NCBI GenBank assembly: GCA_965240325.2
Contig: OZ251236.1
Coordinates: 496,001-560,000 of the forward strand
Direction: 5' to 3'
DNA length: 64,000 nucleotides
Source: Rebecca billardiae RCC1528
Taxonomy: Eukaryota; Protista; Haptophyta
Shown here: positions 37,874-64,000 of the stretch, piece after piece
Layout: each line of letters starts with the position of its first letter
Numbering within the stretch: position 1 is the first letter of the stretch
Translations under genes and position numbers: made by a program
The notes under the pieces: model-generated
Told to the model about the DNA's origin: nothing
Databases searched by the model: none
Seen by the model: the letters and a program-made list of their open reading frames with translations, nothing else

Positions 37874-40800
37874 TCATGTTTGCTGCGGTACGCTGATCAC
37901 GCTGCACATGCCGCACAGATCACCAAGTATGCGTGCGGGTCGGCGCAGCTGGTGCAAGAACGGCTCGACAAACACCTCGAGCAGCCAGTCGCGCCACGGC
38001 TCGGGCAGGTAATGCCGCACCGTGTACTCGAGTGTCACCTGTATCATCACGATGAGCGGCTCGATCAGGCCGATCTTGAACAGCGTTTCGAGCGCCCATG
38101 CGCCCAAGATAGCTTCGCGCCACTGCGCAGGGTCGCGCACACCACCCGCCCCCGCACTGCCAAGCAGTGAAAATGCGAGGAGGAGCGTGCTGAGCGAAGT
38201 CATGAGCGCGATGTTGATGCCCCACACGAGCTGGCGCTTCCAGCGCTTGGGCTTGTTTGCCCACCAGGTCGCCTCCTCGAGCTCGTGCCGTGTCAGCCGC
38301 ACCCGCGCAAGCACTTGGCGCTGGCGCCCGCCCGCCGCGCCATGCATCAACTCGTGTCGAGCCACTGCGGCTGCCGCGCGTGCGGACGAGCGGCCCGACG
38401 AGCTGGGGGCTGCACTGGAAGCTCGCGTTGTCACGTGCGCGTCGTCCTGCTCACGCGCGCATTGGAGAGATTTGAGCGCCTCGCGCGCCGCCACGTCGGG
38501 CGCGGCGACCACGTGCGCAGGCTGCACGCGTGTGCCATGCGTGTAGGGTGAGACGGTGTACGTGACGCACACCATCTTGATTCGAGGGCCACCCCGGGCG
38601 CGCGGCGCTGCTCCGTACACGGTCTCAACCTCCTCGCGAGCGAGAGGCGGCGCGCGGCGCACGAGCTCGGCCTGCACGAAGCGCACGTGGGAGTGCAAGG
38701 GAAGCAGCTGGGTGCCAACAGGGGTCGTCGGACTGAGCAGCTCGGCGGGGCGTGTGGCGAGCGACTGCAACACCGAGCGCGCGTTGTGGCCTGGCTCGCC
38801 TTGCAGCCCCAGACGGCCGCCACCCGGCGGGTAGTAGAAATCAGTCTGCTGAGGCTGCTCTGGGTCGGCGCCGCCGCTGGCCGTTGTATGCCGCTGCCAC
38901 ACCTCGCACGCGACCAAGAAGCCAACCAGTTGCCCCGCCTCCAGCGTGATTGCAATCAGTGCCTGCTCGGGCATCTCGACAGCCAGCTCGTCCTCCGAGG
39001 CCATGGAGTCTCCTGACGTGAAGCCGCCCGCCGGCTGCGGCGGCACCATCTGAAGTTGAGCCGGTGCAGGGGCGGGGGCTGGGTCGATGACGCGGACGAG
39101 GTCGGGGCGCACGTATCGCAGGCGCCCCAGCTTGCCGCCCTTGCCCACGTCCTCGTCTTGAGCAGCCGTGCTCGTCATGGAAGTTCGTCGTGTCCGTGTG
39201 GAGACAACTGTGCTCCGCGCCAGCGGCTCGCGATGGAGCGATCCACCCGTCACCGCGGAGGGGTGGCGCAGCGAGGAGCTGCCACCGCCATTGGCAGGCA
39301 CACCGACAGGCAGCGCGTACAGCGGCGAAGGTGGAGCGCCACCCCCTACCCTGAGAGCGCGCTGCAGCGCGGCTTCGTCGCGCGCCTGCCCTCTTCGCTC
39401 CTCGAAGAGCCCGCGCCGCCGCGATGCCCACAGCCACAGGTTCTCCAGCAGCAGCACCTCGTACGGGAAGCCCGCCACGAGCCCGATGGCGACGGCGAGA
39501 ACGAGCTGCGTGGCGTTACTGTCACTCGATCGACCGAGGTACAGCGCCACCACAAACAGCTCCATGAGCGTCACGTTGAACAGCACTGCAACGCGCTGCT
39601 TGGCGCTGATCGGCTCGCCAGGCAGCCGCGTCAGCCAGGAGGTGAGCGTCGAGCGCCTGAGAATGTTCGCACAGACGCGCCACGCGAGCGACGTTTTCGC
39701 GCGGCGCTGCCAGACAGGAACGACGGGCCTGGTCTCCAGCGCGACATCGATGTGGTACGCCACTGCCCCCAGCGCGCCAAAGAGGCCGAGCATGAGCGCC
39801 AACACGACCACGCCCCAGTAGTTCGCCTCAAGCCGCGCGCCCAGTGCGAGCACGACCTGATCCGCCGGAGCGCTTCCACCCAGGTCGGCCTCGAGCTCCT
39901 CTGCGTCCACGGGCGTATTCACCTGCACCCCGCCGCCGTCGCCACTGGTGAGCGTCTCGATCGCGACGGCGAGTGCGGCAAAGTCTGTGAGGTGGTCGCA
40001 CGCGCATACGAGCGCGCCTGGGCGGTCGGTGCGCGTCCCAGTCGTGCACCCGTCCGCCGACCACGCTTCGCTCGTCGCGTTCCAGAAGTGGCAGAGCACC
40101 AGCTCGTCGCACGTGGCACCGGCGAACGCAGGGCTGCACTCGCACACGCCTGCGCTGGCGTTGCACCTGCCGCGCTCGCTGTCGCCGGGTGGCGCGCACA
40201 GCGCGCCAGAGGCGCACGTGTCGAGGCTGTCCACGTCAGCGGCAGGGTCGCCGAGCGTGGGCAGCTTCGACAGCTCGAGCAGTGGGACGGCGATCTCAAC
40301 GGGTTCGACGAGCCCGACAATGCGGAAGGGCTCACGCTGAGCGGCGGGCAGCAGCCGCACACCAAAGATCGCCGACTGGAGCGCACGCTGCTCGCCCAGC
40401 CTGTACGTGCCCTCAGCGGCCGCGTCGGGCACGAGCGCAGCGTCAACTGCGTCGAGGTTGGATGGCGAGCCGCGCGGGTCAGCGTGGATGTTGCGCTGTA
40501 GCCGCACGAGCTGGACGTCGACGCCGGACTCGGTCGCTGCGGGGTCCACGCCGGCGAGCACGGCTGATGGTAGTGAGATCGCGCCGCTCCCACCCGGCCC
40601 GTCAAGCGTGCTGTTGGGCAGCGTGTTGGCGAATGCGCGGAGGGAGCGTATAGCAACGCGCACGCCCACCGCCTCACGCGCCGCCTCGCCCGGCAGAATG
40701 CCCTCGAGCAGTCCGCCCGCGAGCGTGGTCACCACACGATCGATCGCGGTGTCGACTGTCGTGACCGTCACCGGCTCGAGCTCGACGTCAGCGCCACTGC

Positions 40801-43800
40801 TGCCGAGCAGCGTGCTCTCGATTCCGCCGAGCGAGTTGGACGCTGTCGTGTCGTCCACACCCACCGCCGCGTCGCGCGAGCGTTCCAGCACGGCTGTGAT
40901 CTGGTCGAGACCTTCCGCCTGCGCGGAGGGCTCGACTCCACCTGTCGCCGCGAGCACGGTGGCGATGGCGCCGGTGAGCTGCGCCTCGCTGCCGTCGCTG
41001 TCGGACGAGCGCTTCACGGCAACAGAGGCCGTGATGGCGAGCAGCTCGCGCACCACCTCGCGACCCTCGTTCGAGTCCACAGCCGTGATGTCGGCGACAC
41101 TCGCGTCGGCGAGCGCAACGACTAGCTGAAGCGCGAGGTCGAGGTCTTCTGTGTCGACAGCGCGCTGTGCCTCGCCGATCACACCGCGCGTTGCGTTGGC
41201 GCTTGTGTCGGCAGGCTCGGGCGGCAGTACCAGGACACTCGCTGTTGCGCGTGACACGCCGTCGAACTGGTCGTACACATTGAGCGTGCACACGCGCGCA
41301 CCGACGGGCAGCACGGCGCTGGTCTGCGCCTCGAGAGTGCGCCTGGTCACGTACTGTTCCACGCTCGCGCCCACGCGATCAGTAGCCTGGTAGCCGAACC
41401 GGTACCGCAGCGGCAGATCGTCTGGATCGTCCGCCCACTCGAGCGCAGAGAGCGCGGCTGCTTGAAGATAGCGCAGCTCGGACGGCTCAGCAAGCAGCAC
41501 GCCGCCGTGCGGTGGGCGGTTCATCAAGACGGTCACGTCTACCGACGCCGTCTCCGCGCCGCCACTCACGTCCAGCTTGAGCACGTAAGTTGCGCCGGGC
41601 AGCGGCACACCGGAGCGGAAGACGAAGGTGGGCTTGCGGATGCCCGTGGTCGTGACTGTGTTCGCGTCCGCGAGGTCAAGGCTCGTTGGCACCGTTTGCC
41701 CGCCGATCAGCTCGGTGGCGCTCCAGCGGTAGGTGTAAGATATGTTACCTACCGCCTGCACGCGCACAGCACTTGACTCGAGCCCAACCGTCAGCCCGAC
41801 TGCCTCCGTCGGCGTGGTCCACACCGTGTTGTACTTGGCCTTGGAGAGCGGTGGCACGAGCAACTCGGGCACGTAGTCGTTCACCACGGTCAGCCACGCA
41901 CGTGTCGACGAGGTGCGGCCATCGGCGGCGGCAACGACGAGCACGGCGGAGTACTCGCCCACGCCGGCGAGGGCGGTGAGCGGCAGCGTGAGCGTTGAGC
42001 GGTTCACGGCAACGCCGCCCCGTGCGGCGTCAATCGGCGTGCTGGGCGCGCTGGGTGAGGCGCCTGCGCGCTCGACGGCCCATGAGTACGTGAGCTCCTC
42101 GCCGCGGCCAACGTTCGGGTCCGTCGAGGAGGAGCCGTCGATGACGGCCCTCGTCGCCGTGACCGAGACGACCTGCGTGCGCGGGGCAATCAGTGCGCGG
42201 ACAGGCTGTGACTCCACGACGAGCTGCACGCGCGCGCTCGCGACCGCACTTGGCTCCACCGCCATCGTCGCCGTCGCCTCGAGCGTGTACGTGTACTTCG
42301 CACGCAGCGCAGAAGGCTCGAGCTCGAGCGTGGCGAGCTGAGGTTCGGTGTCGCCGAAGATCGTCAGTGGCACCGCAGGGTCGGGCAGCGAGGCGTTGTT
42401 TGGCGAGGCACTGATCGCGCGCCATGAGAACTGGACGGCGCTCGAGCGCTCGCCGATGGGCCAGCACGCAGCCAAGCGCACACTTGCTCGCACGACGTTT
42501 CGAACGTCGGGCCTCACCCGGACCTGGGCTGGGCCCTCCACCGTAAGCATGGGCTCGAGACCGCTTGAGCGCACGACCTCGAAGGCCGCGATCTCGGAGC
42601 TGAGGCCGAGAAAGGAGGTCACGCGAAGCTTGAAGATGTACCGCGAACCGGGCGGCAGCAACAGGTCGAGAGTCGGCGCCGTCGCCGCCGCGACCTCCGC
42701 GGAAAGCGTCGTGGCGGCCTCCGGAGTGAGACCGACAGTCGCGTCGAGCGCCCAGGCGTACCGGAGTGCTGCAACCCCACCGCCGGTCGAGCCGGCCGAG
42801 GACAGCCTGAGCCGCTGGTCTGGGCATGCGGAGATGGACGTCGGGCCGACGATCCTCGCGACTGGTGTCAAGCAGCCTCCCGCGCATGCGACAGCAGGCT
42901 CCAGAGGGATGCGCTGCTCGGTGGCGGTCGCGCACAGCTCGTCGGGGCATGGGATGGCCGAGAGGCGTGGCCGCAGCACATCGCCGCGAAGCCCAAGCTC
43001 ATCGCCCGGCGCGACCGTCGTCTGCGAGTTGAGCTGCGCAACCAGTGTGCTGTCGTCCTCCCAGTAGCAGCCGGGCGCGCTCGACGCGCCGCCCTGAATG
43101 CGCGCGACCGTTGCGTCGTCGAGCACGACGGCGCATGGCCGCACGCCCGACATGCCCGCACGGTCGGTTGGCTGCTCGTCGAGCTGGAAGATGAGAGTGG
43201 TTGCCTCGGCGCCGAAGACGACGCTGAGAAGCGCGGGCGCGTGCAGGCCCTCCAGGTAGCTGAACGTCGTATTGGGAGCGCTCGCCGGTGAAGGCGCACC
43301 ATACTGCTGACCGTTGAGCGCGACGGTGACGACTGCGCTCGACTTGGGCGCGCCAAACGGCGAAAGCACCACGATTGCATCGTCGGACACGCGCACGGGT
43401 GGCGGCGCCGGCACGGCTCCGAAGCGCACGCGCAGCGCGGTGCTCGCGTCTGACGCATTGTGCGTACGGTTGGTTGCATTGAGCAGGCCGCCAAAGCCAC
43501 CGCCCGAAACCGTGACCGCGTTACCGCCGCGTGGGTCGCCCTTGTTAGGCGAAATCCACTGCACGCGCGGCGGCGCGTAGTACACAAACTGCAGGCCGGC
43601 GTTCGTCGTCATTCCGGAGACGCCCCCCACCGAGAGCTCGATGCTGTGGACGCCCTCGCTCGAGGCTGCTGGCAGGGCGCACGCTGCACGCACTGTGCTG
43701 GAGCCGGCCGAGCTGAGCAACAGGCTCGCGGGCGCTGCGCACGCGCCATCAAGCACGCAGCAAAGCCCATCCGAAGCGAGCGCACCGCCGAAACCCGCAC

Positions 43801-46800
43801 CACTAAGCGTGATGCGCGTGCCGCCGCCCACAGGCCCGCCGGCTGGATCAACACCGTCCAAGCGCACGCTGCCAATGTCGTACAGGTACATGCGTGCTCG
43901 CTGAAACACATCGAAGACGAGGTCGCGCCCGTCGCCGTTGAGGCTGAGCTGCACGTGGTACGAAGCGCCCGACACCGCTTCCTCCGGCTGGATCTGGAGA
44001 CACTCCGCCGTGCTGCTGTCCACGATCGTCGCCGGCCGAGCAAACGGCTCGGCGCCCGGACCGCCGTCACTGCGCGTGTAGAAGCACCGGGCTACGCCAA
44101 CGCCGAGATCGACGAAGCCCGCGCCCGTCAGTGTCACCGGCGTAGCGCTCGTGGCGGGCAGCGCAGATGGCTTGCACTCGCTCACCTCCGCCGTGTACAG
44201 GACGAGGGTCGCTGCCACGGGCGCAAATGTGACGTTATTGGCGGAGACCTCAACGCTGACCGTGTACGCGCCCACGCCGCTTGGAAGGCGCAGCAGCGGC
44301 AGCGCACAGCGCACATCGGCACCCGACTCGAGCACCGCCGGCACGACGGCCACGCCGCCAAAGCGGCACGACACGCCGCCATGATCGGCAAAGCCTGCGC
44401 CACGCACGAGCAACTCGCGGCCCTCGAGGCCCTCTGGCACGCCCGCAGGCTCAACTGCCGAGGGCGTGGCTGCTGCCGCGTCGTACCACACGAAGGTGCC
44501 TGTCGCAGGCAGCACCTCGCCGCCTGCGCGCAGCTCGACCACCACGGCCGATGCAACCAGCGGTGGTACGAGCTGCTCGCACACGACCGCGCTCGCCGTG
44601 ATGGCCGCCACGCCCACCTCGAGAATCGGCGCGCCGGTCGCATTGGGGTAGAAAACGCACGAAAGCGCCGCGCGCCGCGAGCCGAGGTGCCCGAGAAAGG
44701 AGCCGTGGAGGGTCACGTTCGTGGGCGTTTCGATAGCCGCACCGGTGGGGCTCGCGCCGCGCAGCGTGCTCTCCGACTCGAAGAAGGGCGATGGGGGCGT
44801 CGGCGGTGGTACGGGCGAGACCAGCGGCGGTGGCGACGAGCTCGGGGGCGGCGCCGGTGTCGTCGGCTGCGGGGAGTCGCAGCTGCCGTCGTCGATCGTC
44901 GCACTGGAGTCAAAGTTGGTCGCGTCCAGCCGGACGCAGCCCGGGAACACTTGCACAGGAAATGCGGCCACGTCGACCCCGAGAACGACAGAGAGCTGAG
45001 CAAGCGAGTAGCCGTTCAAATTGGCAACCACATCGATGCCCGCACCTGGGTCTGCGTGCTGGTACACCTCGACCAAGAGCACCGCAGAGCCGGCTGCGAG
45101 GCTGACGAGGCGCATTTGGTCCGAAGGGACGCCGGTGAGCAGCTCGATACCGGCAAAGATCTCGGCAATGACCGCGGGCGTAAGCTCGGACAAGTCACCG
45201 CTGACCTGCAACGAAAGGAGCGTGCGTGTGCCGGGCAACGGCGAAGGCGATGGTGACGGCGGAGGAGGCGACTTCATTGGTGGAACCGGTGGCACTTGGC
45301 TCGGCGGTGGCGACGGCGGCACTCGGCGCGGTGGTGGAGTTGTTGGTGGGCTCGACGGTGGGCTCAGCGGCGTGCTCGGTGGTGGTAGGCTCGGCGGTGG
45401 CGACGATGGCGGTAGGTCCGACGGCGGGGTCGGTGGTGGGCTCGGCGTTGGCGAAGGCGGCGGTGAAGGCGGCGGCGGGCTCGGCGGTAGCGAAGGCGGC
45501 GGCGAGGGCGGTGGCGAAGGTGGCAGCGGCGAGGGCGGTGGACTCGGAGGCGGCAGGCTCGGCGGCGGGCTCGGCGGCGGCGGGCTCGGAGGTGGCGACG
45601 GCGGCGGCGGCGATGGCGGAGGCGACGGCGGTGGTGATGACGGTGGCGGTGACGGTGGCGGATGCGGCGGCACGCTCGGCGGTGGCGACGGTGGTGGCGA
45701 CGGTGGTAGTGGCGATGGTGGCGGCGACGGCGGCGGTGACGGCGGTGGGCTCGGTGGCGATGACGGCGGAGGCGGCGGGCTCGGCGGCGGGCTCGGCGGC
45801 GGGCTCGGCGGGGGGCTCGGCGGCGGGCTCGGCGGGGGCGACGGTGGCTTGGGGCTCGGCGGCGGGCTCGGCGGTGGCGAAGGCGGCGGCGAGGGCGGTG
45901 ACGAAGGTGGCGGAGGCGAGGGCGGTGGGCTCGGAGGCGGCAGGCTCGGCGGCGGGCTCGGTGGCGGCGGGCTCGGAGGTGACGACGGCGGCGGCGGCGA
46001 TGGCGGAGGCGACGGCGGTGGTGATGACGGTGGCGGTGACGGTGGCGGATGCGGCGGCAGGCTCGGCGGTGGCGACGGTGGTGGTGACGGTGGCGGTGGC
46101 GCTGGTGGCGGCGACGGCGGCGGTGACGGCGGTGGGCTCGGTGGCGATGACGGCGGAGGCGGCGGGCTCGGCGGCGGGCTCGGCGGCGGGCTCGGCGGGG
46201 CGCTCGGCGGTGGCGACGGTGGCTTTGGGCTCGGCGGCGGGCTCGGCGGTGGCGAAGGCGGCGGCAAAGGCGGTGGCGAAGGTGGCGGCGGCGACGGCGG
46301 TGGGCTCGGAGGCGGCAGGCTCGGCGGCGGGCTCGGTGGTGGCGGGCTCGGAGGTGGCGACAGCGGCGGCGGCGATGGCGGAGGCGACGGTGGTGGTGAT
46401 GACGGTGGCGGTGACGGTGGTGGATTTGGTGGCAGGCTCGGCGGTGGCGACGGTGGTGGTGACGGTGGTGGTGGCGCTGGTGGCGGCGACGGCGGCGGTG
46501 ACGGCGGTGGGCTCGGTGGCGATGACGGCGGAGGCGGCGGGCTCGGCGGCGGGCTCGGCGGCGGGCTCGGCGGGGGGCTCGGCGGTTGCGACGGTGGCTT
46601 GGGGCTCGGTGGCGGGCTCGGCGGTGGCGAAGGCGGCGGCGAGGGCGGTGACGAAGGTGGCGGCGGTGACGGCGGTGCGCTCGGAGGCGGCAGGCTCGGC
46701 GGCGGGCTCGGTGGCGGCGGGCTCGGAGGTGGCGACGGCGGCGGCGGCGATGGCGGAGGCGACGGCGGTGGTGATGACGGTGGCGGTGACGGTGGTGGAT

Positions 46801-52800: not shown

Positions 52801-55800
52801 ACAAACACGTTCTCCGTCTGCGAGTCGCTCGGCGCGACCCACGCGTCAGCCACACCCGTCAAGTTGAGGTGGTACAGCAAGTACTGCACCTCGCGCTCGC
52901 TGCCGGGCAGAAAGAGATGGCCCGACAGCCCGGCTGACTCGTTGCCCAACGCAGCACAGCCTGCAGCCGCCTGCGCGTGCGTCGCGCTGGTCTTGAAGCC
53001 GACGAAGCACTTGTCCACGGCGCCGCCCGTCCACACGGCAGCCCCCATGTCGCCAACGGAGCACGCGCGGCCCAGCGCAGTCGGCGGTGGCGGCGGTGGT
53101 GGAGCGACGAGCTCGCACACGTAGCTGGACACCAGCGCGCACGCATGATGCGTGTAAATGCCGTCGGACGTGCGCATCTGCACGCAGTACGGCGTGCCAG
53201 ACGCATCTGGAAACCCGTTCTGGCGCGGGCCGGCCAGCCAGTTGTGCAGTCCCACTGGCTGACCATCGGCGCGCGCCCACTCGCCAAGCGTAAGCGCCGT
53301 GGGAGCTCCTTCCGTCTGGTCCTTCATGCCGATCCATGGGCCGTCGGCTGCCGCCATGCCGAGTGAGCTCGTGTTGAGCTGCGTGAGCGCGAACGCAATC
53401 TCGCCGACGCTCAGCGGCGTCAGAAGTCGTCCGATGTACGCGCCCTCCGTCGCAGTCCCCAGCGACTCGCACGCAGCTTGCGCCTGCGCGCGCGCGCGGG
53501 CGCAGCAGGCAGACGACGAGCGCGCGCGCGGCGCAACACGCCGAGGCGGGGCACGGAGCGCAGGGCGGTGAGCGCAGCGCAGGCGAGGAGCGTTCGCAGG
53601 CATGCGTGCGCGCGTACCGCCGCCCACGTGGTCGTCAGATTCGAGGTGAAGCCCATGATGCACTTGTCGACCACGCCTGAGGTCCAAATGGCGTTGCCAG
53701 CGTCGCCCTGCCAGCACGGCGGCACGAACTGGCCCGCCACTGCTGCGCTTGGCGCCGGGGGCGAGTGTGGCGGGCTCGGCGGCGGGCTCGGCGGTGGCGA
53801 AGGCGGCGGCGAGGGCGGTGGCGACGGTGGCGGCGGCGGGGCCGGTGGGCTCGGAGGTGGCAGGCTCGGCGGCGGGCTCGGTGGCGGCGGGCGCGGAGGT
53901 GGCGACGGCGGACGCGGCGGGCTCGGCGGCGGGCGCGGCGGTGGGCTCGGCGGGGGGCTCGGCGGTGAGCTCGGCGGGGGGCTCGGCGGAGGGGGTGAAA
54001 GCGATCGCGTGATGGTGAGGTTGCTCACGCGATTGGGCTCGTTGGGTTGCGTCATGCCGCTCCGGCTGAGCCCGCCTAGGTACACCCTCACATCCGAGAA
54101 TGCAGCGCGCACGCCGCCGTTCGCGTATGTGTGCTCGCAAGCTGTCGACGTGCTGTTTGCGCTGTCCGAAAGCTCGACACGAATGGTGGATAGGGAGAGA
54201 GTGGCTGTGATGTGAATCGGCATGCCCGGCGCGGGAATGTCAAAGACGCCGCAGCCGTCGTCGCTTGCGCCGGAGTGGTCCGTTCTCACGTAGAGGCCGT
54301 CAGTGAACCCAAAGGCGACGTACAGCACACGGTCGCCATATGAGCAGCAGCCGCCGCCGGTGACGGTGAGGTGGAGAACGTCGCGCCACCCGCCGTCGTA
54401 AACGTTTGCAAGCGGCTCGAGCGACAGGCGAACGGTGAATTCCTCCGGCACGTCGATCGTGGCGATGTGGTTGTTCAATCCAGGCTGGACCGGCCCCGCG
54501 AGCTCGAGCAGCACGCCCGGCGTCAACGGCTGCGCCGGAGGGTCGACGAGCTCGCACACGTAGCCGTACGTATTCGTGCACGGGTGATTTGTGGCCCACT
54601 GCGTGCCGCCGCGACGGGGCGGGTCAATCAGCCGCACGCAATCGCCGACATGAGTGTTACGGTTTGGATACCACTCCGTGTACGCGAGCGCCTCGCCACT
54701 CACTGCGAGATAGTCGTCAGTTGAGGTGATGTCGAAGACGCCTATCCACGGCTGGCTCATCGAGATCAAGTCCAGGTGGTAGTACCAGTACTGGAGCTCG
54801 ATTGCGCTCAGTGGTACGGCCAGTCTGCCGACCAGGCCAGCTGCGATGCCCAGCGCGACGCAAGCCTCCTGCGCCTGCGGGTGGCAGTCGTGGGGCATCC
54901 GCCATCGGCGGGCGCGCGCACGCGTGGCAGGCGGCGAGGGGGGATGCATATGAGCGTGGACACTTCTCGCGTACGAGATTATGACGGGGATGCATGGTGG
55001 TGGGGGAGGCGCAAGTCGTCGTGTCCATCTCACAGAAGGGGGTGCGCACGCGCGCACACCGCAGTCCCTGAAAGTGATGCAGAGAAGCCCATGAAGCACT
55101 TCTCGACGGCGCCACCTGTCCACACGACGTTGCCGGCGGTGCCCGATGTGCACGCGGCGCCCACGGGCGTGGACGGCGGCGGTGGCGGCGCGCTGGCCGA
55201 CAGCTCGCAGATGTACGCCGGCACGATGTTGAGGCATGGCCAATCACCCCACGTGTCGCCATACCAGAAGATCCCGTCGAAGCTGGCGCAGTCCTGGTTG
55301 CCTTGAAGGTTGTTCGGCTGCTCAATCCGCCACGGGTAGAAGCCGGCCAGCTTGGAGTCGCTGCCGCGCACAAACACGTTCTCCGTCTGCGAGTCGCTCG
55401 GCGCGACCCACGCGTCAGCCACACCCGTCAAGTTGAGGTGGTACAGCAAGTACTGCACCTCGCGCTCGCTGCCGGGCAGAAAGAGATGGCCCGACAGCCC
55501 GGCTGACGCGTTGCCCAACGCAGCACAGCCTGCAGCCGCCTGCGCGTGCGTCGCGCTGGTCTTGAAGCCGACGAAGCACTTGTCCACGGCGCCGCCCGTC
55601 CACACGGCAGCCCCCATGTCGCCAACGGAGCACGCGCGGCCCAGCGCAGTCGGCGGTGGCGGCGGTGGTGGAGCGACGAGCTCGCACACGTAGCTGGACA
55701 CCAGCGCGCACGCATGATGCGTGTAAATGCCGTCGGACGTGCGCATCTGCACGCAGTACGGCGTGCCAGACGCATCTGGAAACCCGTTCTGGCGCGGGCC

Positions 55801-58800
55801 GGCCAGCCAGTTGTGCAGTCCCACTGGCTGACCATCGGCGCGCGCCCACTCGCCAAGCGTAAGCGCCGTGGGAGCTCCTTCCGTCTGGTCCTTCATGCCG
55901 ATCCATGGGCCGTCGGCTGCCGCCATGCCGAGTGAGCTCGTGTTGAGCTGCGTGAGCGCGAACGCAATCTCGCCGACGCTCAGCGGCGTCAGAAGTCGTC
56001 CGATGTACGCGCCCTCCGTCGCAGTCCCCAGCGACTCGCACGCAGCTTGCGCCTGCGCGCGCGCGCGGGCGCAGCAGGCAGACGACGAGCGCGCGCGCGG
56101 CGCAACACGCCGAGGCGGGGCACGGAGCGCAGGGCGGTGAGCGCAGCGCAGGCGAGGAGCGTTCGCAGGCATGCGTGCGCGCGTACCGCCGCCCACGTGG
56201 TCGTCAGATTCGAGGTGAAGCCCATGATGCACTTGTCGACCACGCCTGAGGTCCAAATGGCGTTGCCAGCGTCGCCCTGCCAGCACGGCGGCACGAACTG
56301 GCCCGCCACTGCTGCGCTTGGCGCCGGGGGCGAGTGTGGCGGGCTCGGCGGCGGGCTCGGCGGTGGCGAAGGCGGCGGCGAGGGCGGTGGCGACGGTGGC
56401 GGCGGCGGGGCCGGTGGGCTCGGAGGTGGCAGGCTCGGCGGCGGGCTCGGTGGCGGCGGGCGCGGAGGTGGCGACGGCGGACGCGGCGGGCTCGGCGGCG
56501 GGCGCGGCGGTGGGCTCGGCGGGGGGCTCGGCGGTGAGCTCGGCGGGGGGCTCGGCGGAGGGGGTGAAAGCGATCGCGTGATGGTGAGGTTGCTCACGCG
56601 ATTGGGCTCGTTGGGTTGCGTCATGCCGCTCCGGCTGAGCCCGCCTAGGTACACCCTCACATCCGAGAATGCAGCGCGCACGCCGCCGTTCGCGTATGTG
56701 TGCTCGCAAGCTGTCGACGTGCTGTTTGCGCTGTCCGAAAGCTCGACACGAATGGTGGATAGGGAGAGAGTGGCTGTGATGTGAATCGGCATGCCCGGCG
56801 CGGGAATGTCAAAGACGCCGCAGCCGTCGTCGCTTGCGCCGGAGTGGTCCGTTCTCACGTAGAGGCCGTCAGTGAACCCAAAGGCGACGTACAGCACACG
56901 GTCGCCATATGAGCAGCAGCCGCCGCCGGTGACGGTGAGGTGGAGAACGTCGCGCCACCCGCCGTCGTAAACGTTTGCAAGCGGCTCGAGCGACAGGCGA
57001 ACGGTGAATTCCTCCGGCACGTCGATCGTGGCGATGTGGTTGTTCAATCCAGGCTGGACCGGCCCCGCGAGCTCGAGCAGCACGCCCGGCGTCAACGGCT
57101 GCGCCGGAGGGTCGACGAGCTCGCACACGTAGCCGTACGTATTCGTGCACGGGTGATTTGTGGCCCACTGCGTGCCGCCGCGACGGGGCGGGTCAATCAG
57201 CCGCACGCAATCGCCGACATGAGTGTTACGGTTTGGATACCACTCCGTGTACGCGAGCGCCTCGCCACTCACTGCGAGATAGTCGTCAGTTGAGGTGATG
57301 TCGAAGACGCCTATCCACGGCTGGCTCATCGAGATCAAGTCCAGGTGGTAGTACCAGTACTGGAGCTCGATTGCGCTCAGTGGTACGGCCAGTCTGCCGA
57401 CCAGGCCAGCAGCGATGCCCAGCGCGACGCAAGCCTCCTGCGCCTGCGGGTGGCAGTCGTGGGGCATCCGCCATCGGCGGGCGCGCGCACGCGTGGCAGG
57501 CGGCGAGGGGGGATGCATATGAGCGTGGACACTTCTCGCGTACGAGATGTTGAGGACGCATGGTGGTGGGGGAGGCGCAAGTCGTCGTGTCCATCTCACA
57601 GAAGGGGGTGCGCACGCGCGCACACCGCAGTCCCTGAAAGTGATGCAGAGAAGCCCATGAAGCACTTCTCGACGGCGCCACCTGTCCACACGACGTTGCC
57701 GGCGGTGCCCGATGTGCACGCGGCGCCCACGGGCGTGGACGGCGGCGGTGGCGGCGCGCTGGCCGACAGCTCGCAGATGTACGCCGGCACGATGTTGAGG
57801 CATGGCCAATCACCCCACGTGTCGCCATACCAGAAGATCCCGTCGAAGCTGGCGCAGTCCTGGTTGCCTTGAAGGTTGTTCGGCTGCTCAATCCGCCACG
57901 GGTAGAAGCCGGCCAGCTTGGAGTCGCTGCCGCGCACAAACACGTTCTCCGTCTGCGAGTCGCTCGGCGCGACCCACGCGTCAGCCACACCCGTCAAGTT
58001 GAGGTGGTACAGCAAGTACTGCACCTCGCGCTCGCTGCCGGGCAGAAAGAGATGGCCCGACAGCCCGGCTGACGCGTTGCCCAACGCAGCACAGCCTGCA
58101 GCCGCCTGCGCGTGCGTCGCGCTGGTCTTGAAGCCGACGAAGCACTTGTCCACGGCGCCGCCCGTCCACACGGCAGCCCCCATGTCGCCAACGGAGCACG
58201 CGCGGCCCAGCGCAGTCGGCGGTGGCGGCGGTGGTGGAGCGACGAGCTCGCACACGTAGCTGGACACCAGCGCGCACGCATGATGCGTGTAAATGCCGTC
58301 GGACGTGCGCATCTGCACGCAGTACGGCGTGCCAGACGCATCTGGAAACCCGTTCTGGCGCGGGCCGGCCAGCCAGTTGTGCAGTCCCACTGGCTGACCA
58401 TCGGCGCGCGCCCACTCGCCAAGCGTAAGCGCCGTGGGAGCTCCTTCCGTCTGGTCCTTCATGCCGATCCATGGGCCGTCGGCTGCCGCCATGCCGAGTG
58501 AGCTCGTGTTGAGCTGCGTGAGCGCGAACGCAATCTCGCCGACGCTCAGCGGCGTCAGAAGTCGTCCGATGTACGCGCCCTCCGTCGCAGTCCCCAGCGA
58601 CTCGCACGCAGCTTGCGCCTGCGCGCGCGCGCGGGCGCAGCAGGCAGACGACGAGCGCGCGCGCGGCGCAACACGCCGAGGCGGGGCACGGAGCGCAGGG
58701 CGGTGAGCGCAGCGCAGGCGAGGAGCGTTCGCAGGCATGCGTGCGCGCGTACCGCCGCCCACGTGGTCGTCAGATTCGAGGTGAAGCCCATGATGCACTT

Positions 58801-61800
58801 GTCGACCACGCCTGAGGTCCAAATGGCGTTGCCAGCGTCGCCCTGCCAGCACGGCGGCACGAACTGGCCCGCCACTGCTGCGCTTGGCGCCGGGGGCGAG
58901 TGTGGCGGGCTCGGCGGCGGGCTCGGCGGTGGCGAAGGCGGCGGCGAGGGCGGTGGCGACGGTGGCGGCGGCGGGGCCGGTGGGCTCGGAGGTGGCAGGC
59001 TCGGCGGCGGGCTCGGTGGCGGCGGGCGCGGAGGTGGCGACGGCGGACGCGGCGGGCTCGGCGGCGGGCGCGGCGGTGGGCTCGGCGGGGGGCTCGGCGG
59101 TGAGCTCGGCGGGGGGCTCGGCGGAGGGGGTGAAAGCGATCGCGTGATGGTGAGGTTGCTCACGCGATTGGGCTCGTTGGGTTGCGTCATGCCGCTCCGG
59201 CTGAGCCCGCCTAGGTACACCCTCACATCCGAGAATGCAGCGCGCACGCCGCCGTTCGCGTATGTGTGCTCGCAAGCTGTCGACGTGCTGTTTGCGCTGT
59301 CCGAAAGCTCGACACGAATGGTGGATAGGGAGAGAGTGGCTGTGATGTGAATCGGCATGCCCGGCGCGGGAATGTCAAAGACGCCGCAGCCGTCGTCGCT
59401 TGCGCCGGAGTGGTCCGTTCTCACGTAGAGGCCGTCAGTGAACCCAAAGGCGACGTACAGCACACGGTCGCCATATGAGCAGCAGCCGCCGCCGGTGACG
59501 GTGAGGTGGAGAACGTCGCGCCACCCGCCGTCGTAAACGTTTGCAAGCGGCTCGAGCGACAGGCGAACGGTGAATTCCTCCGGCACGTCGATCGTGGCGA
59601 TGTGGTTGTTCAATCCAGGCTGGACCGGCCCCGCGAGCTCGAGCAGCACGCCCGGCGTCAACGGCTGCGCCGGAGGGTCGACGAGCTCGCACACGTAGCC
59701 GTACGTATTCGTGCACGGGTGATTTGTGGCCCACTGCGTGCCGCCGCGACGGGGCGGGTCAATCAGCCGCACGCAATCGCCGACATGAGTGTTACGGTTT
59801 GGATACCACTCCGTGTACGCGAGCGCCTCGCCACTCACTGCGAGATAGTCGTCAGTTGAGGTGATGTCGAAGACGCCTATCCACGGCTGGCTCATCGAGA
59901 TCAAGTCCAGGTGGTAGTACCAGTACTGGAGCTCGATTGCGCTCAGTGGTACGGCCAGTCTGCCGACCAGGCCAGCAGCGATGCCCAGCGCGACGCAAGC
60001 CTCCTGCGCCTGCGGGTGGCAGTCGTGGGGCATCCGCCATCGGCGGGCGCGCGCACGCGTGGCAGGCGGCGAGGGGGGATGCATATGAGCGTGGACACTT
60101 CTCGCGTACGAGATGTTGAGGACGCATGGTGGTGGGGGAGGCGCAAGTCGTCGTGTCCATCTCACAGAAGGGGGTGCGCACGCGCGCACACCGCAGTCCC
60201 TGAAAGTGATGCAGAGAAGCCCATGAAGCACTTCTCGACGGCGCCACCTGTCCACACGACGTTGCCGGCGGTGCCCGATGTGCACGCGGCGCCCACGGGC
60301 GTGGACGGCGGCGGTGGCGGCGCGCTGGCCGACAGCTCGCAGATGTACGCCGGCACGATGTTGAGGCATGGCCAATCACCCCACGTGTCGCCATACCAGA
60401 AGATCCCGTCGAAGCTGGCGCAGTCCTGGTTGCCTTGAAGGTTGTTCGGCTGCTCAATCCGCCACGGGTAGAAGCCGGCCAGCTTGGAGTCGCTGCCGCG
60501 CACAAACACGTTCTCCGTCTGCGAGTCGCTCGGCGCGACCCACGCGTCAGCCACACCCGTCAAGTTGAGGTGGTACAGCAAGTACTGCACCTCGCGCTCG
60601 CTGCCGGGCAGAAAGAGATGGCCCGACAGCCCGGCTGACGCGTTGCCCAACGCAGCACAGCCTGCAGCCGCCTGCGCGTGCGTCGCGCTGGTCTTGAAGC
60701 CGACGAAGCACTTGTCCACGGCGCCGCCCGTCCACACGGCAGCCCCCATGTCGCCAACGGAGCACGCGCGGCCCAGCGCAGTCGGCGGTGGCGGCGGTGG
60801 TGGAGCGACGAGCTCGCACACGTAGCTGGACACCAGCGCGCACGCATGATGCGTGTAAATGCCGTCGGACGTGCGCATCTGCACGCAGTACGGCGTGCCA
60901 GACGCATCTGGAAACCCGTTCTGGCGCGGGCCGGCCAGCCAGTTGTGCAGTCCCACTGGCTGACCATCGGCGCGCGCCCACTCGCCAAGCGTAAGCGCCG
61001 TGGGAGCTCCTTCCGTCTGGTCCTTCATGCCGATCCATGGGCCGTCGGCTGCCGCCATGCCGAGTGAGCTCGTGTTGAGCTGCGTGAGCGCGAACGCAAT
61101 CTCGCCGACGCTCAGCGGCGTCAGAAGTCGTCCGATGTACGCGCCCTCCGTCGCAGTCCCCAGCGACTCGCACGCAGCTTGCGCCTGCGCGCGCGCGCGG
61201 GCGCAGCAGGCAGACGACGAGCGCGCGCGCGGCGCAACACGCCGAGGCGGGGCACGGAGCGCAGGGCGGTGAGCGCAGCGCAGGCGAGGAGCGTTCGCAG
61301 GCATGCGTGCGCGCGTACCGCCGCCCACGTGGTCGTCAGATTCGAGGTGAAGCCCATGATGCACTTGTCGACCACGCCTGAGGTCCAAATGGCGTTGCCA
61401 GCGTCGCCCTGCCAGCACGGCGGCACGAACTGGCCCGCCACTGCTGCGCTTGGCGCCGGGGGCGAGTGTGGCGGGCTCGGCGGCGGGCTCGGCGGTGGCG
61501 AAGGCGGCGGCGAGGGCGGTGGCGACGGTGGCGGCGGCGGGGCCGGTGGGCTCGGAGGTGGCAGGCTCGGCGGCGGGCTCGGTGGCGGCGGGCGCGGAGG
61601 TGGCGACGGCGGACGCGGCGGGCTCGGCGGCGGGCGCGGCGGTGGGCTCGGCGGGGGGCTCGGCGGTGAGCTCGGCGGGGGGCTCGGCGGAGGGGGTGAA
61701 AGCGATCGCGTGATGGTGAGGTTGCTCACGCGATTGGGCTCGTTGGGTTGCGTCATGCCGCTCCGGCTGAGCCCGCCTAGGTACACCCTCACATCCGAGA

Positions 61801-64000
61801 ATGCAGCGCGCACGCCGCCGTTCGCGTATGTGTGCTCGCAAGCTGTCGACGTGCTGTTTGCGCTGTCCGAAAGCTCGACACGAATGGTGGATAGGGAGAG
61901 AGTGGCTGTGATGTGAATCGGCATGCCCGGCGCGGGAATGTCAAAGACGCCGCAGCCGTCGTCGCTTGCGCCGGAGTGGTCCGTTCTCACGTAGAGGCCG
62001 TCAGTGAACCCAAAGGCGACGTACAGCACACGGTCGCCATATGAGCAGCAGCCGCCGCCGGTGACGGTGAGGTGGAGAACGTCGCGCCACCCGCCGTCGT
62101 AAACGTTTGCAAGCGGCTCGAGCGACAGGCGAACGGTGAATTCCTCCGGCACGTCGATCGTGGCGATGTGGTTGTTCAATCCAGGCTGGACCGGCCCCGC
62201 GAGCTCGAGCAGCACGCCCGGCGTCAACGGCTGCGCCGGAGGGTCGACGAGCTCGCACACGTAGCCGTACGTATTCGTGCACGGGTGATTTGTGGCCCAC
62301 TGCGTGCCGCCGCGACGGGGCGGGTCAATCAGCCGCACGCAATCGCCGACATGAGTGTTACGGTTTGGATACCACTCCGTGTACGCGAGCGCCTCGCCAC
62401 TCACTGCGAGATAGTCGTCAGTTGAGGTGATGTCGAAGACGCCTATCCACGGCTGGCTCATCGAGATCAAGTCCAGGTGGTAGTACCAGTACTGGAGCTC
62501 GATTGCGCTCAGTGGTACGGCCAGTCTGCCGACCAGGCCAGCTGCGATGCCCAGCGCGACGCAAGCCTCCTGCGCCTGCGGGTGGCAGTCGTGGGGCATC
62601 CGCCATCGGCGGGCGCGCGCACGCGTGGCAGGCGGCGAGGGGGGATGCATATGAGCGTGGACACTTCTCGCGTACGAGATTATGACGGGGATGCATGGTG
62701 GTGGGGGAGGCGCAAGTCGTCGTGTCCATCTCACAGAAGGGGGTGCGCACGCGCGCACACCGCAGTCCCTGAAAGTGATGCAGAGAAGCCCATGAAGCAC
62801 TTCTCGACGGCGCCACCTGTCCACACGACGTTGCCGGCGGTGCCCGATGTGCACGCGGCGCCCACGGGCGTGGACGGCGGCGGTGGCGGCGCGCTGGCCG
62901 ACAGCTCGCAGATGTACGCCGGCACGATGTTGAGGCATGGCCAATCACCCCACGTGTCGCCATACCAGAAGATCCCGTCGAAGCTGGCGCAGTCCTGGTT
63001 GCCTTGAAGGTTGTTCGGCTGCTCAATCCGCCACGGGTAGAAGCCGGCCAGCTTGGAGTCGCTGCCGCGCACAAACACGTTCTCCGTCTGCGAGTCGCTC
63101 GGCGCGACCCACGCGTCAGCCACACCCGTCAAGTTGAGGTGGTACAGCAAGTACTGCACCTCGCGCTCGCTGCCGGGCAGAAAGAGATGGCCCGACAGCC
63201 CGGCTGACGCGTTGCCCAACGCAGCACAGCCTGCAGCCGCCTGCGCGTGCGTCGCGCTGGTCTTGAAGCCGACGAAGCACTTGTCCACGGCGCCGCCCGT
63301 CCACACGGCAGCCCCCATGTCGCCAACGGAGCACGCGCGGCCCAGCGCAGTCGGCGGTGGCGGCGGTGGTGGAGCGACGAGCTCGCACACGTAGCTGGAC
63401 ACCAGCGCGCACGCATGATGCGTGTAAATGCCGTCGGACGTGCGCATCTGCACGCAGTACGGCGTGCCAGACGCATCTGGAAACCCGTTCTGGCGCGGGC
63501 CGGCCAGCCAGTTGTGCAGTCCCACTGGCTGACCATCGGCGCGCGCCCACTCGCCAAGCGTAAGCGCCGTGGGAGCTCCTTCCGTCTGGTCCTTCATGCC
63601 GATCCATGGGCCGTCGGCTGCCGCCATGCCGAGTGAGCTCGTGTTGAGCTGCGTGAGCGCGAACGCAATCTCGCCGACGCTCAGCGGCGTCAGAAGTCGT
63701 CCGATGTACGCGCCCTCCGTCGCAGTCCCCAGCGACTCGCACGCAGCTTGCGCCTGCGCGCGCGCGCGGGCGCAGCAGGCAGACGACGAGCGCGCGCGCG
63801 GCGCAACACGCCGAGGCGGGGCACGGAGCGCAGGGCGGTGAGCGCAGCGCAGGCGAGGAGCGTTCGCAGGCATGCGTGCGCGCGTACCGCCGCCCACGTG
63901 GTCGTCAGATTCGAGGTGAAGCCCATGATGCACTTGTCGACCACGCCTGAGGTCCAAATGGCGTTGCCAGCGTCGCCCTGCCAGCACGGCGGCACGAACT
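37874..64000 (-). CDS. Giant polycystin-1/REJ-like GPS receptor (>8,000 aa, 5'-incomplete): tandem C-type lectin/ConA-like units, Ser-Pro stalk, IPT/TIG repeats, REJ, EGF-like, GPS, ~5 TM
   Basis: GPS CHFWNATSEAWSADGC...CACDHL|TDFA (~39975-40095). REJ motifs (NRPPHGG...WADDPDDLPLRYRFGY). IPT repeats (DPAGGPVGGGTRITLSGAGF; ISPNKGDPRGGNAVTVSGGGF). PKD1-like TM motifs (ISAKQRVAVLF; FKIGLIEPL). Two GT-AG introns per repeat unit restore one continuous frame. Confidence 0.85.
45260..48855 (-). repeat. Coding extensin-like (SPPP)n/(PPSX)n repeat, ~1,200 aa, with higher-order sub-blocks
   Basis: In-frame Ser-Pro3-4 repeats with recurring SPKPP, SLPPNPPP and APPPP markers. Confidence 0.92.
48850..64000 (-). 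repeat. Intragenic tandem array of ~6 units of 2566-2573 bp
   Basis: Identical ORF patterns recur at 49158, 51731, 54300, 56869, 59435 and 62001. Each unit has a 134-nt intron plus a 182-189-nt intron and 2250 coding nt. Confidence 0.95.

What the first reader, a model, noticed from the sequence alone, without database searches (positions are those of the whole stretch)
37874..64000. Giant lectin-array / extensin-stalk / REJ-GPS surface receptor (>8,000 aa), hidden by introns
Seen: the ORF track shows many fragments, but removing two GT-AG introns per 2.57-kb unit (e.g. 50915-51048 = 134 nt; 52306-52490 = 185 nt) leaves exactly 2250 nt = 750 codons. All units therefore splice in frame into the C-terminal ORF. 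N to C: at least 6 x [3 C-type lectin domains + ConA/LamG-like beta domain + Pro linker], ~1,200-aa SPPP stalk, IPT/TIG repeats, REJ, EGF-like, intact GPS (HL|T), about 5 TM helices. No PLAT domain or 6-TM channel module is recognisable. Known: sea-urchin REJ and polycystin-1 combine C-type lectin, REJ and GPS; Chlamydomonas sexual agglutinins display heads on PPSPX hydroxyproline-rich shafts. Inference: a chimera of both designs, a long multivalent glycan-sensing or adhesion antenna (mate, prey, virus or scale/flagellar recognition) that may be cleaved at the GPS and partner a separate PKD2-like channel.
Basis: partly seen in the sequence, partly recalled or inferred. Interest (0 to 1): 0.9.

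Follow-up and report, generated by a model that had tools for sequence, protein, structure and literature searches.

The report
Giant stalked lectin-array polycystin-1-like receptor
A very GC-rich alga has one gene, interrupted by twelve short introns, for a surface protein of more than 8,000 residues: at least 18 lectin-fold domains on a proline rod about 0.4 micrometre long, anchored by the front half of a polycystin-1-type receptor with no ion-channel half. The reading is by sequence and predicted fold only.

Summary
All 12 introns sit between codons (phase 0).

Pfam confirms three C-type lectin domains per 750-residue unit, plus TIG, REJ and GPS. The fourth domain of each unit has no Pfam match. 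A low-confidence model of it matches only ConA-like jelly rolls (Z 10-12).

The stalk is 1,211 residues, 70% Pro and 23% Ser. The GPS motif is complete (C, W, W, C, CxC, HL|T).

The five-helix membrane part has no Pfam match. Its model matches polycystin-1 residues 3072-3610 (TM1-TM5) at Z 16.9, with the next hit at 6.1. There is no PLAT domain and no channel domain.

Five units are 99.7-100% identical in DNA, introns included, so the copy number needs long reads.

Sugar binding is uncertain. Only the middle lectin domain keeps part of the calcium/sugar site (QPN, Q, WGD).

The scan has already reported the same stalk-and-base family at many other loci of this genome, with RCC1, FG-GAP or LRR heads. 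The lectin-array head and its introns are what is new here.

No transcript or protein evidence was available.

The parts
37874..64000 (-). Whole gene as far as the window shows it: 13 exons, 8,070 codons. The 5' end, with the start codon and signal peptide, lies beyond 64000.
   Evidence: Spliced frame open from 63998 to the stop at 37874-37876.
61430..63998 (-). Unit 0: CTLD1-CTLD2-CTLD3, ConA-like domain, Pro-rich linker (750 aa, 2569 nt).
   Evidence: DNA identical to unit 3.
58864..61429 (-). Unit 1 (750 aa, 2566 nt).
   Evidence: DNA identical to unit 2.
56298..58863 (-). Unit 2 (750 aa, 2566 nt).
53729..56297 (-). Unit 3 (750 aa, 2569 nt).
51160..53728 (-). Unit 4 (750 aa, 2569 nt). It differs from unit 0 at 2 nt, giving one residue change, A219E.
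   Evidence: Pfam Lectin_C on both exons.
48863..51159 (-). Unit 5, nearest the stalk: folded part only. It has 25 residue differences from the other units, about half of them in the loops of CTLD2.
63754..63887 (-). Intron A of unit 0 (134 nt, GT..AG, phase 0).
62576..62760 (-). Intron B of unit 0 (185 nt).
61185..61318 (-). Intron A of unit 1 (134 nt).
60010..60191 (-). Intron B of unit 1 (182 nt).
58619..58752 (-). Intron A of unit 2 (134 nt).
57444..57625 (-). Intron B of unit 2 (182 nt).
56053..56186 (-). Intron A of unit 3 (134 nt).
54875..55059 (-). Intron B of unit 3 (185 nt).
53484..53617 (-). Intron A of unit 4 (134 nt).
   Evidence: Read directly.
52306..52490 (-). Intron B of unit 4 (185 nt).
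   Evidence: Read directly.
50915..51048 (-). Intron A of unit 5 (134 nt).
49733..49921 (-). Intron B of unit 5 (189 nt). A 4-nt insertion makes it open in frame, so the raw ORF reads through it.
51406..51978 (-). ConA-like beta-sandwich domain of unit 4, as the example; it occupies the same place in every unit.
   Evidence: No Pfam or PDB sequence match. The model is all-beta. The VIA top 50 are all ConA-like folds, Z 10.3-12.3 with 129-171 residues aligned.
52614..53063 (-). CTLD2 of unit 4, the only lectin domain with part of the calcium/sugar site (QPN ... NQDC ... WGD).
   Evidence: Aligns with collectin-11 at 4.8e-6.
45230..48862 (-). Ser-Pro3/4 stalk of 1,211 aa, built from higher-order repeats of about 375 nt (125 aa).
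44786..45229 (-). Small module after the stalk, plus a Cys-loop motif (C..A.N[FY]D..A..DDGSC). No Pfam match. The same module begins P0017 from another assembly.
43250..44785 (-). IPT/TIG region. Three stretches pass Pfam, and there is room for about five domains.
41114..43249 (-). REJ module. The Pfam REJ match covers 41114-42349.
   Evidence: E 1e-34.
40103..40198 (-). EGF-like six-Cys module (weak).
   Evidence: 17-19 bits, below the curated cut-offs. The CxCx5Gx2C pattern is read.
39971..40096 (-). GPS motif. The predicted cleavage HL|T lies between 39989 and 39988.
   Evidence: Pfam GPS 3.6e-9. Alignment with the ADGRG3 GAIN domain keeps all motif residues.
39731..39820 (-). TM1.
39530..39604 (-). 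TM2.
39422..39514 (-). TM3.
38246..39421 (-). Cytoplasmic loop of about 390 aa: mostly disordered, with a conserved small beta-rich module of unknown fold.
   Evidence: pLDDT 80-92 at model residues 335-372 and 436-478. Conserved in homologues. No EF-hand by Pfam.
38162..38245 (-). TM4.
38009..38131 (-). TM5, followed by a C-terminal helix and the stop.

Best explanation
This is one real nuclear gene of a very GC-rich, haptophyte-type alga. It encodes a giant surface protein with its N-terminus outside the cell.

From the far end to the membrane:
1. At least six near-identical 750-residue cassettes. Each holds three long-form C-type-lectin-fold domains, one ConA-like beta-sandwich and a Pro-rich linker of about 95 residues.
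2. A Ser-Pro3/4 rod of 1,211 residues, about 0.37 micrometre as a polyproline-II helix at 3.1 A per residue. By analogy with algal hydroxyproline-rich glycoproteins it is probably hydroxylated and glycosylated.
3. A small module of unknown kind after the stalk, then TIG domains, a REJ module, an EGF-like module and a GAIN/GPS autoproteolysis site.
4. A five-helix membrane bundle predicted to fold like TM1-TM5 of polycystin-1. It has neither the PLAT domain nor the TM6-TM11 channel half.

Shown here: the gene structure, the domains and the fold assignments.

Inferred:
- The cassettes form a multivalent binding brush, held far from the cell or flagellar surface, that catches a repeated ligand such as a glycan or another surface polymer.
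- Pull on the rod is passed to the REJ/GAIN junction. That junction is cleaved at HL|T and can let go or expose its tethered strand, as in polycystin-1 and adhesion GPCRs.
- The five-helix bundle with its large cytoplasmic loop anchors the protein and may pass the signal on.

The gene is one member of a family that shares rod and base and swaps heads. Because every intron is phase 0, cassettes could be added, lost or skipped without breaking the frame.

The confidence of 0.55 is for the whole statement. I put the gene structure and domain order at about 0.9, and the binding-and-signalling role at about 0.45.
For: Gene structure:
- 12 GT-AG phase-0 introns, and an 8,070-codon frame after splicing.
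- The two intron classes sit at homologous positions, and their removal restores the lectin-domain consensus.
- 8 of the 10 variable columns among units 0-4 fall in the introns, which make up 12% of the unit.
- GC3 of the exons is 0.80-0.82 throughout.

Domains:
- Lectin_C x3 per unit, TIG, REJ 1e-34 and GPS 3.6e-9.
- CTLD2 aligns with collectin-11.
- The fourth domain matches ConA-like folds only, Z 10-12.3.
- The GPS aligns with the ADGRG3 GAIN domain with all motif residues kept.

Base:
- An AF2 model built from an 18-sequence alignment has pLDDT 69.9 and pTM 0.67.
- Its best match is the PC1 chain of 8z6b: Z 16.9, rmsd 3.2 A, 179 residues aligned, PC1 3072-3610. The next hit is Z 6.1, and no PKD2/TRP channel is in the top 50.
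- The layout TM1 / loop / TM2-TM3 / long cytoplasmic loop / TM4-TM5 is that of PC1.

Family:
- A paralogue with TIG-REJ-GPS and the same base (40-45% identity) lies on short-read contigs from the same organism.
- Another assembly has an SPPP frame followed by the post-stalk module, TIG, REJ and GPS.

Precedent: Chlamydomonas MST3 puts its N-terminus at the far end of a poly-hydroxyproline rod anchored by a polycystin-type membrane domain. Relatives carry CTL, LRR, SRCR or SEA heads (PMC11015965).
Against: - No transcript, protein or read-depth evidence was available.
- The 5' end and the signal peptide lie outside the window.
- Five cassettes are 99.7-100% identical in DNA, so their number could be an assembly estimate.
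- The lectin domains lack a canonical calcium/sugar site. CTLD2 has QPN, Q and WGD; CTLD1 and CTLD3 have none of it.
- The model of the head domain is of low confidence (pLDDT 44.6).
- Foldseek found nothing for the base, and a sequence profile of the base does not find PC1. The PC1 link of the membrane part therefore rests on one predicted model and one aligner.
- Hydroxylation, glycosylation and GPS cleavage are all untested.
- No relatives of the head were found.
Confidence: 0.55

Rival explanations
1. Structural hair rather than receptor. The protein would be the core or whole of a passive surface or flagellar fibre: a mastigoneme-like hair or a glycocalyx bristle. The polycystin-like base would be only an anchor, and the lectin-fold cassettes would bundle fibres or hold scales or mucilage, with no signalling.
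For: Chlamydomonas MST3 is such a rod, with a polycystin-type anchor and CTL and Ig-like domains (PMC11015965). The rod here is 1,211 residues of Ser-Pro3/4. The lectin domains lack a canonical sugar site. No EF-hand or other signalling domain was found in the cytoplasmic part. From general knowledge, not tested here: pavlovophyte flagella carry fine hairs and knob scales.
Against: A complete GPS motif and a REJ module are kept. The large cytoplasmic loop holds a folded module that is conserved in homologues. Both suggest more than an anchor. The anchor type also differs from MST3: it resembles PC1 TM1-TM5, not PKD2 S2-S6.
Confidence: 0.3
2. Array inflated or garbled by assembly. The gene would be real but hold fewer, or a different number of, cassettes; the six near-identical copies would be an assembler's solution for a collapsed or expanded repeat.
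For: Units 0 and 3 are identical, units 1 and 2 are identical, and unit 4 differs from unit 0 by 2 nt over 2.57 kb. The array runs off the window end. Public short-read assemblies of the same organism break at such repeats.
Against: Two unit types (2569 and 2566 nt) alternate in a definite order, A-B-B-A-A', followed by a diverged sixth unit. That pattern is what a resolved long-read assembly gives, not a collapsed repeat. The frame is intact through all junctions.
Confidence: 0.15
3. Decaying or silent gene. The array would be a recent amplification that is not expressed as one protein, or the segments called introns would be retained, giving truncated products.
For: There are no expression data. 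Between the proximal unit and the others pN/pS is about 1.45 on few changes. Intron A has no stop in any frame.
Against: 24 kb stay open after splicing, with not one stop or frameshift. Codon bias is uniform. Indels between units lie only in intron B. Retaining intron A, or intron B in five of the six units, would shift the frame.
Confidence: 0.07
4. Channel subunit like MST3. The five helices would be an incomplete PKD2-like channel domain (S2-S6), completed by a small SIP-like protein and built into a polycystin channel.
For: MST3 and seven other Chlamydomonas proteins with poly-Pro rods have exactly five helices of this kind (PMC11015965).
Against: The model matches PC1 3072-3610, which is TM1-TM5, at Z 16.9. 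No PKD2, PKD2L1 or TRP chain appears in the top 50. TM4 and TM5 are joined by about 10-20 residues, which leaves no room for pore helices. There is no Pfam PKD_channel hit at E<=1.
Confidence: 0.03

Closest known systems
Polycystin-1 (PKD1) and PKD1-like/PKDREJ proteins of animals
   Same: C-type lectin domain(s) in the ectodomain, Ig-like repeats, a REJ module, GAIN/GPS with HL|T, and a first membrane bundle of five helices with a long TM3-TM4 cytoplasmic loop. The model matches PC1 3072-3610 at Z 16.9.
   Different: No PLAT domain in the first loop. No TM6-TM11 channel-like half or TOP domain, and no C-terminal coiled coil was found. TIG domains replace the PKD repeats. There are 18 or more lectin domains instead of one. 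The 1,211-residue Ser-Pro rod has no counterpart in PC1. Sequence similarity in the membrane part is undetectable.
[quoted passage not shown]
   Same: C-type lectin domains, an EGF-like module, a REJ module and a GPS in one sperm-surface glycoprotein that binds a glycan ligand. This is general knowledge; the REJ link is cited in PMC9672506.
   Different: suREJ1 has two lectin domains and a single TM helix, and no proline rod. Here there are five TM helices of PC1 type and a repeated cassette head.
Chlamydomonas MST3 (mastigoneme core) and its seven SIP-dependent relatives (PMC11015965)
   Same: A giant N-out protein with a binding-type head (CTL, LRR, SRCR or SEA), a long poly-(hydroxy)proline rod and a polycystin-family membrane anchor of five helices. 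This is the same design principle in another algal lineage.
   Different: MST3's anchor is a PKD2-like channel domain lacking S1, completed by SIP, and it has no REJ or GAIN. Here the anchor is REJ-GAIN plus a PC1 TM1-TM5-like bundle with no pore. MST3 copolymerises with MST1; nothing is known on that point here.
Hydroxyproline-rich glycoproteins: extensins and Chlamydomonas sexual agglutinins
   Same: Ser-Pro3/4 repeats over more than 1,000 residues, with a globular head on a shaft.
   Different: Agglutinins and extensins are wall or flagellar-surface proteins without a REJ/GAIN/multi-pass base. Hydroxylation and arabinosylation are untested here.
Adhesion GPCRs
   Same: A GAIN/GPS autoproteolysis motif next to the membrane; it aligns with ADGRG3. 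A long adhesive ectodomain.
   Different: Adhesion GPCRs have a seven-helix secretin-like bundle. Here there are five helices, and the best GPCR matches reach only Z about 5.5.

Membership tests
Polycystin-1 family | REJ module | tested here: met
   Pfam PF02010, E 1e-34, profile positions 36-452 of 452.
Polycystin-1 family | GAIN/GPS with HL|T next to the first TM helix | tested here: met
   Pfam GPS 3.6e-9. C, W, W, C, CxC and HLT are all kept against ADGRG3. Cleavage itself was not tested.
Polycystin-1 family | N-terminal membrane bundle TM1-TM5 | tested here: met
   VIA-align Z 16.9, rmsd 3.2 A, 179 residues aligned, to PC1 3072-3610 of 8z6b; next hit Z 6.1. This rests on a predicted model. 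Foldseek found nothing.
Polycystin-1 family | PLAT domain in the first cytoplasmic loop | tested here: not met
   No Pfam hit at E<=1. The TM1-TM2 loop is only about 45-55 residues.
Polycystin-1 family | Channel-like TM6-TM11 with a TOP domain (11 TM in all) | tested here: not met
   Only five TM helices, and the stop comes about 45 residues after TM5. No PKD_channel hit. The structural match ends at PC1 3610.
C-type lectins that bind sugar through calcium | CTLD fold | tested here: met
   Pfam Lectin_C for all three domains of a unit. PDB hits are collectin-11, tetranectin and mincle.
C-type lectins that bind sugar through calcium | Calcium site 2: EPN or QPD, then E, then WND | tested here: inconclusive
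   CTLD2 has QPN, Q and WGD where collectin-11 has EPN, E and WND. CTLD1 and CTLD3 have none of it.
ConA-like lectin/glucanase fold (LamG, legume lectin, GH16, galectin) | Curved two-sheet jelly roll of about 170-230 residues | tested here: inconclusive
   All 50 top VIA matches have this fold, Z 10.3-12.3. But the model is single-sequence with pLDDT 44.6, and there is no Pfam or PDB sequence match.
MST3-type proteins (partial PKD2-like domain completed by SIP) | PKD2-like S2-S6 with a pore domain | tested here: not met
   No PKD2/TRP chain among the top matches. The TM4-TM5 link is too short for pore helices.
MST3-type proteins (partial PKD2-like domain completed by SIP) | Long poly-(hydroxy)proline rod between head and anchor | tested here: met
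   1,211 residues, 70% Pro and 23% Ser. Hydroxylation is not testable here.
Adhesion GPCR | Seven-helix secretin-like bundle after the GAIN domain | tested here: not met
   Five helices. GPCR matches reach only Z 4.5-5.5.
Extensin-type hydroxyproline-rich glycoprotein | Ser-Hyp3-4 repeats carrying arabinose and galactose | not testable with these tools
   SPPP/SPPPP repeats are present. The modifications need chemistry.

The most novel reading that the evidence does not exclude
REJ-GAIN plus the five-helix bundle would be a free-standing, ancient receptor module that works without any channel half. In that case animal polycystin-1 is a fusion of this module with a PKD2-like channel, while Chlamydomonas MST3 keeps only the other half. 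In this alga the module would serve as a universal socket for micrometre-scale rods with interchangeable heads. The lectin-cassette head, with all of its introns in phase 0, would let the cell set the number of binding cassettes by exon skipping or unequal recombination, giving a tunable multivalent sensor of prey, mates, viruses or surfaces.
Probability: 0.2. Interest if true: 0.85.

Novelty: new variant of a known kind. Interest (0 to 1): 0.6.

Why it matters
If expressed as read, this is one of the largest lectin-type surface proteins known. It is also a natural example of the sensory half of polycystin-1 working without the channel half.

Three consequences follow:
- It bears on how polycystin-1 arose and on what its first five helices do by themselves, which is still unclear in kidney-disease research.
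- Together with the Chlamydomonas mastigoneme protein MST3, it suggests that [quoted passage not shown] is a widespread protist design for reaching about a micrometre into the water.
- It shows that gene predictions for such genomes can miss giant genes that are split by short, very GC-rich introns.

The family itself has already been met repeatedly by this scan in the same genome. The added value here is the lectin head, the cassette and intron structure, and the test that separates a PC1-front-half anchor from an MST3-type anchor.

Tried and rejected
Searches that gave nothing:
- Word-seeded protein search with exon 2 (CTLD3 plus the ConA-like domain): no hit among candidates of 230-733 aa.
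- The same search with the REJ-GPS-TM region against proteins of 2,500-8,000 aa: no hit.
- phmmer of the ConA-like domain against PDB sequences: nothing.
- Pfam on the post-stalk module and on the 705 residues after the GPS, at E<=1: nothing.
- Foldseek of the base model against the PDB: nothing below E=1. The PC1 match came only from the exhaustive aligner.
- Profile of the base family against PDB sequences: only chance GPCR and SCAP rows, no PC1.
- The base profile does not detect the membrane parts of the EF-hand-bearing relatives P0009 and P0017, so I do not claim they share this base.
- Paper searches for the run accessions and for pavlovophyte hairs and scales: nothing usable.

Weak result: the single-sequence AF2 model of the head piece was poor (pLDDT 44.6).

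Readings considered and rejected:
- Separate genes, one per unit. No stops remain after splicing, and every junction is in frame.
- An MST3-type partial channel (see the rival explanations).
- A sixth TM helix at spliced residues 7709-7727. The model makes this stretch beta strands.
- Positive selection on the proximal unit's loops. Synonymous changes are raised in the same patch, and the counts are small.
- Introner-like mobile introns. Both intron sequences occur only in this array within the window.

Full report
**What is there**

The feature lies on the minus strand. The mechanical ORF list shows one ORF of 4,565 aa (37874-51571). Upstream of it is a ladder of overlapping ORFs of 607 and 559 aa that repeats about every 2,569 nt.

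The repeat finder gives six copies at spacings of 2573, 2569, 2569, 2566 and 2566 nt, with 99-100% identity for five of them. The region is 66-80% G+C. The strong G excess on the plus strand at 45-49 kb is the CCN-rich proline stalk read from the other strand.

**Introns**

I read one unit base by base.

A pattern search finds the same sites in every unit. There are six class-A introns of 134 nt. There are six class-B introns of 185, 182, 182, 185, 185 and 189 nt.

All 12 lie between codons. The exons between them are 993 and 1257 nt. Joining the exons gives 8,070 codons with no stop, from the window end to TGA at 37874-37876.

In the last unit a 4-nt insertion makes intron B 189 nt and open in frame. 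That explains why the raw ORF reads through it with 63 extra residues.

Four independent signs mark these as introns rather than damage:
- Both classes sit at the same column of the lectin-domain alignment, in CTLD1 and in CTLD3. Removing them restores the consensus that CTLD2 carries without interruption.
- All indels between units, and 8 of the 10 variable columns among units 0-4, lie in the introns, which make up 12% of the unit.
- Third-position G+C is 0.80-0.82 in all exons.
- Keeping either intron would shift the frame, except in the last unit.

**The head**

Each cassette has 750 residues. Pfam finds Lectin_C in all three positions. The domains are of the long form, with the extra N-terminal Cys pair.

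The fourth domain, about 170 residues, has no Pfam or PDB sequence match. A single-sequence AlphaFold model is weak (pLDDT 44.6) but all-beta. An exhaustive structural comparison returns only ConA-like jelly rolls in its top 50: a phage Dit carbohydrate-binding module, GH16 glucanases, legume-lectin-like domains, ERGIC-53/VIP36, galectins and the thrombospondin C-terminal domain. Z is 10.3-12.3 over 129-171 residues. I take the fold as likely and the family as open.

Sugar binding is not assured. Against collectin-11, CTLD2 has QPN for EPN, Q for E and WGD for WND. CTLD1 and CTLD3 have nothing comparable.

Cassettes 0-3 are identical in protein, and cassette 4 has one change. The cassette next to the stalk has 25 changes in its folded part, about half of them in the CTLD2 loops. 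Synonymous changes are raised in the same patch, and pN/pS of 1.45 rests on few sites. I read this as a patch that escaped homogenisation, not as proven selection.

At the DNA level, units 0 and 3 are identical and units 1 and 2 are identical.

**Rod and membrane-proximal part**

The stalk has 1,211 residues: 852 Pro and 278 Ser. It is built from higher-order repeats of about 375 nt. As a polyproline-II helix at 3.1 A per residue it would span about 0.37 micrometre; this figure is an inference.

After the stalk come, in order:
- a module of about 150 residues without a Pfam match, ending in a Cys-loop motif
- TIG domains (5.6e-24)
- REJ (1e-34)
- a six-Cys EGF-like stretch that stays below the Pfam cut-offs
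- GPS (3.6e-9)

The GPS aligns with the GAIN domain of ADGRG3 with every motif residue kept, including HL|T.

**The base**

The 705 residues after HL|T have no Pfam match, even at E<=1. An exhaustive HMMER search of 1.84 billion representatives found 131 relatives of the last 1,200 residues. Most of them match only the GPS or the REJ part. Seventeen cover the membrane part.

With those I built an alignment (A1) and a model with pLDDT 69.9 and pTM 0.67. The model shows five long membrane helices: TM1; TM2 and TM3 as a pair; a loop of about 390 residues with a small, confident beta-rich module; then TM4 and TM5 as a pair.

Foldseek found nothing. The exhaustive aligner put the polycystin-1 chain of the PC1/PC2 complex (8z6b_A) first: Z 16.9, rmsd 3.2 A, 179 residues, 18% identity, PC1 residues 3072-3610. 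The next hit was at Z 6.1, and no PKD2 or TRP channel was in the list. That range is the TM1-TM5 part of PC1, before its channel-like half.

The base is therefore the front half of a polycystin-1 membrane domain, without PLAT and without the channel half.

This settles a question that the literature raises. Chlamydomonas MST3 and seven relatives also have proline rods and five helices, but theirs are an incomplete PKD2-like channel domain completed by the small protein SIP (PMC11015965). This protein is not of that kind.

**Relatives**

The window's GT47 gene is 100% identical to short genomic contigs from two public runs, ERR14847148 and ERR14847151. The same runs carry a paralogue with TIG-REJ-GPS followed by the same kind of base, at 40-45% identity. 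That paralogue has an intron exactly at the GPS.

A contig from another run (SRR30664515, 66% G+C) has an open SPPP frame followed by the same post-stalk module, TIG, REJ and GPS. The rod-plus-REJ/GPS design is therefore not peculiar to this locus. Whether that contig shares this five-helix base is not shown.

No relative of the lectin cassette was found. One distant relative of the base comes from a transcriptome collection (P0073). That shows only that the wider family is expressed somewhere.

Earlier notes of this scan report the same rod and base at many other loci of this genome, with RCC1, FG-GAP or LRR heads. None has a lectin array. I used those notes as leads only.

**How it probably works**

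Shown: one gene and its domain order, an intact GPS motif, a PC1-type five-helix base and no channel.

Inferred: the cassettes form a multivalent binding brush at the end of a stiff, probably glycosylated rod. Force or ligand capture acts on the cleaved REJ/GAIN junction. The base anchors the protein and perhaps signals through its cytoplasmic loop.

A purely structural role, as a hair like a mastigoneme, is the main rival. The idea of a PKD2 partner is weak, because the part of PC1 that joins the channel is missing, and no channel gene is nearby.

**Limits**

- There are no expression data.
- The 5' end is outside the window.
- The cassette number needs long reads.
- Both fold assignments rest on predicted models.

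Noticed in passing
window 36520-36760 and 37540-37610: The 3' flank of the gene drops to about 62% G+C. It holds several copies of a palindromic unit of about 40 nt (GGTAAGATGACGAAGCGTTTTACCGCTGCGCCACCAGAGTCGA and its complement), arranged as foldbacks. It looks like a small MITE-like element.
   Followed up: no
window 11997-13751 (+): Exostosin/GT47 glycosyltransferase gene (Pfam 7.6e-11). It is 100% identical to Logan contigs of runs ERR14847148 and ERR14847151, which therefore come from the same organism. GT47 includes extensin arabinosyltransferases, but any link to the stalk is only a thought.
   Followed up: partly
window 8410-11139 (+): An ORF with an Ion_trans_2 pore fragment and a Slowpoke C-terminal-like domain. 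It is probably part of a larger, intron-split BK-type potassium channel gene.
   Followed up: no
window 24651-26255 (+): An ORF ending in a RING-H2 zinc finger (Pfam 1e-12).
   Followed up: no
L001:5100-5240: The paralogue in the same organism has an intron placed exactly after the HLT of its GPS motif ('CACNHLT' ... 'TDFAAIAVAI'). ORF callers therefore split the gene into P0003 and P0002.
   Followed up: partly
window 49733-49921: In the stalk-proximal unit a 4-nt GC/GT microsatellite slip makes intron B 189 nt and stop-free in frame. If retained, it would insert 63 residues into CTLD3 rather than truncate the protein.
   Followed up: yes
window 44786-45229; also the first ~120 residues of P0017 (encoded in L003 from position 1730): A conserved module of about 110 residues follows the stalk, then a motif C..A.N[FY]D..A..DD[GA]SC. 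It has no Pfam match and recurs in relatives from another assembly. It may mark the rod-to-base junction.
   Followed up: partly
P0009 and P0017 (Logan contigs): Some TIG-REJ-GPS relatives carry EF-hands after the GPS. Their membrane parts are not detected by the profile of this gene's base, so there appear to be at least two types of base.
   Followed up: partly
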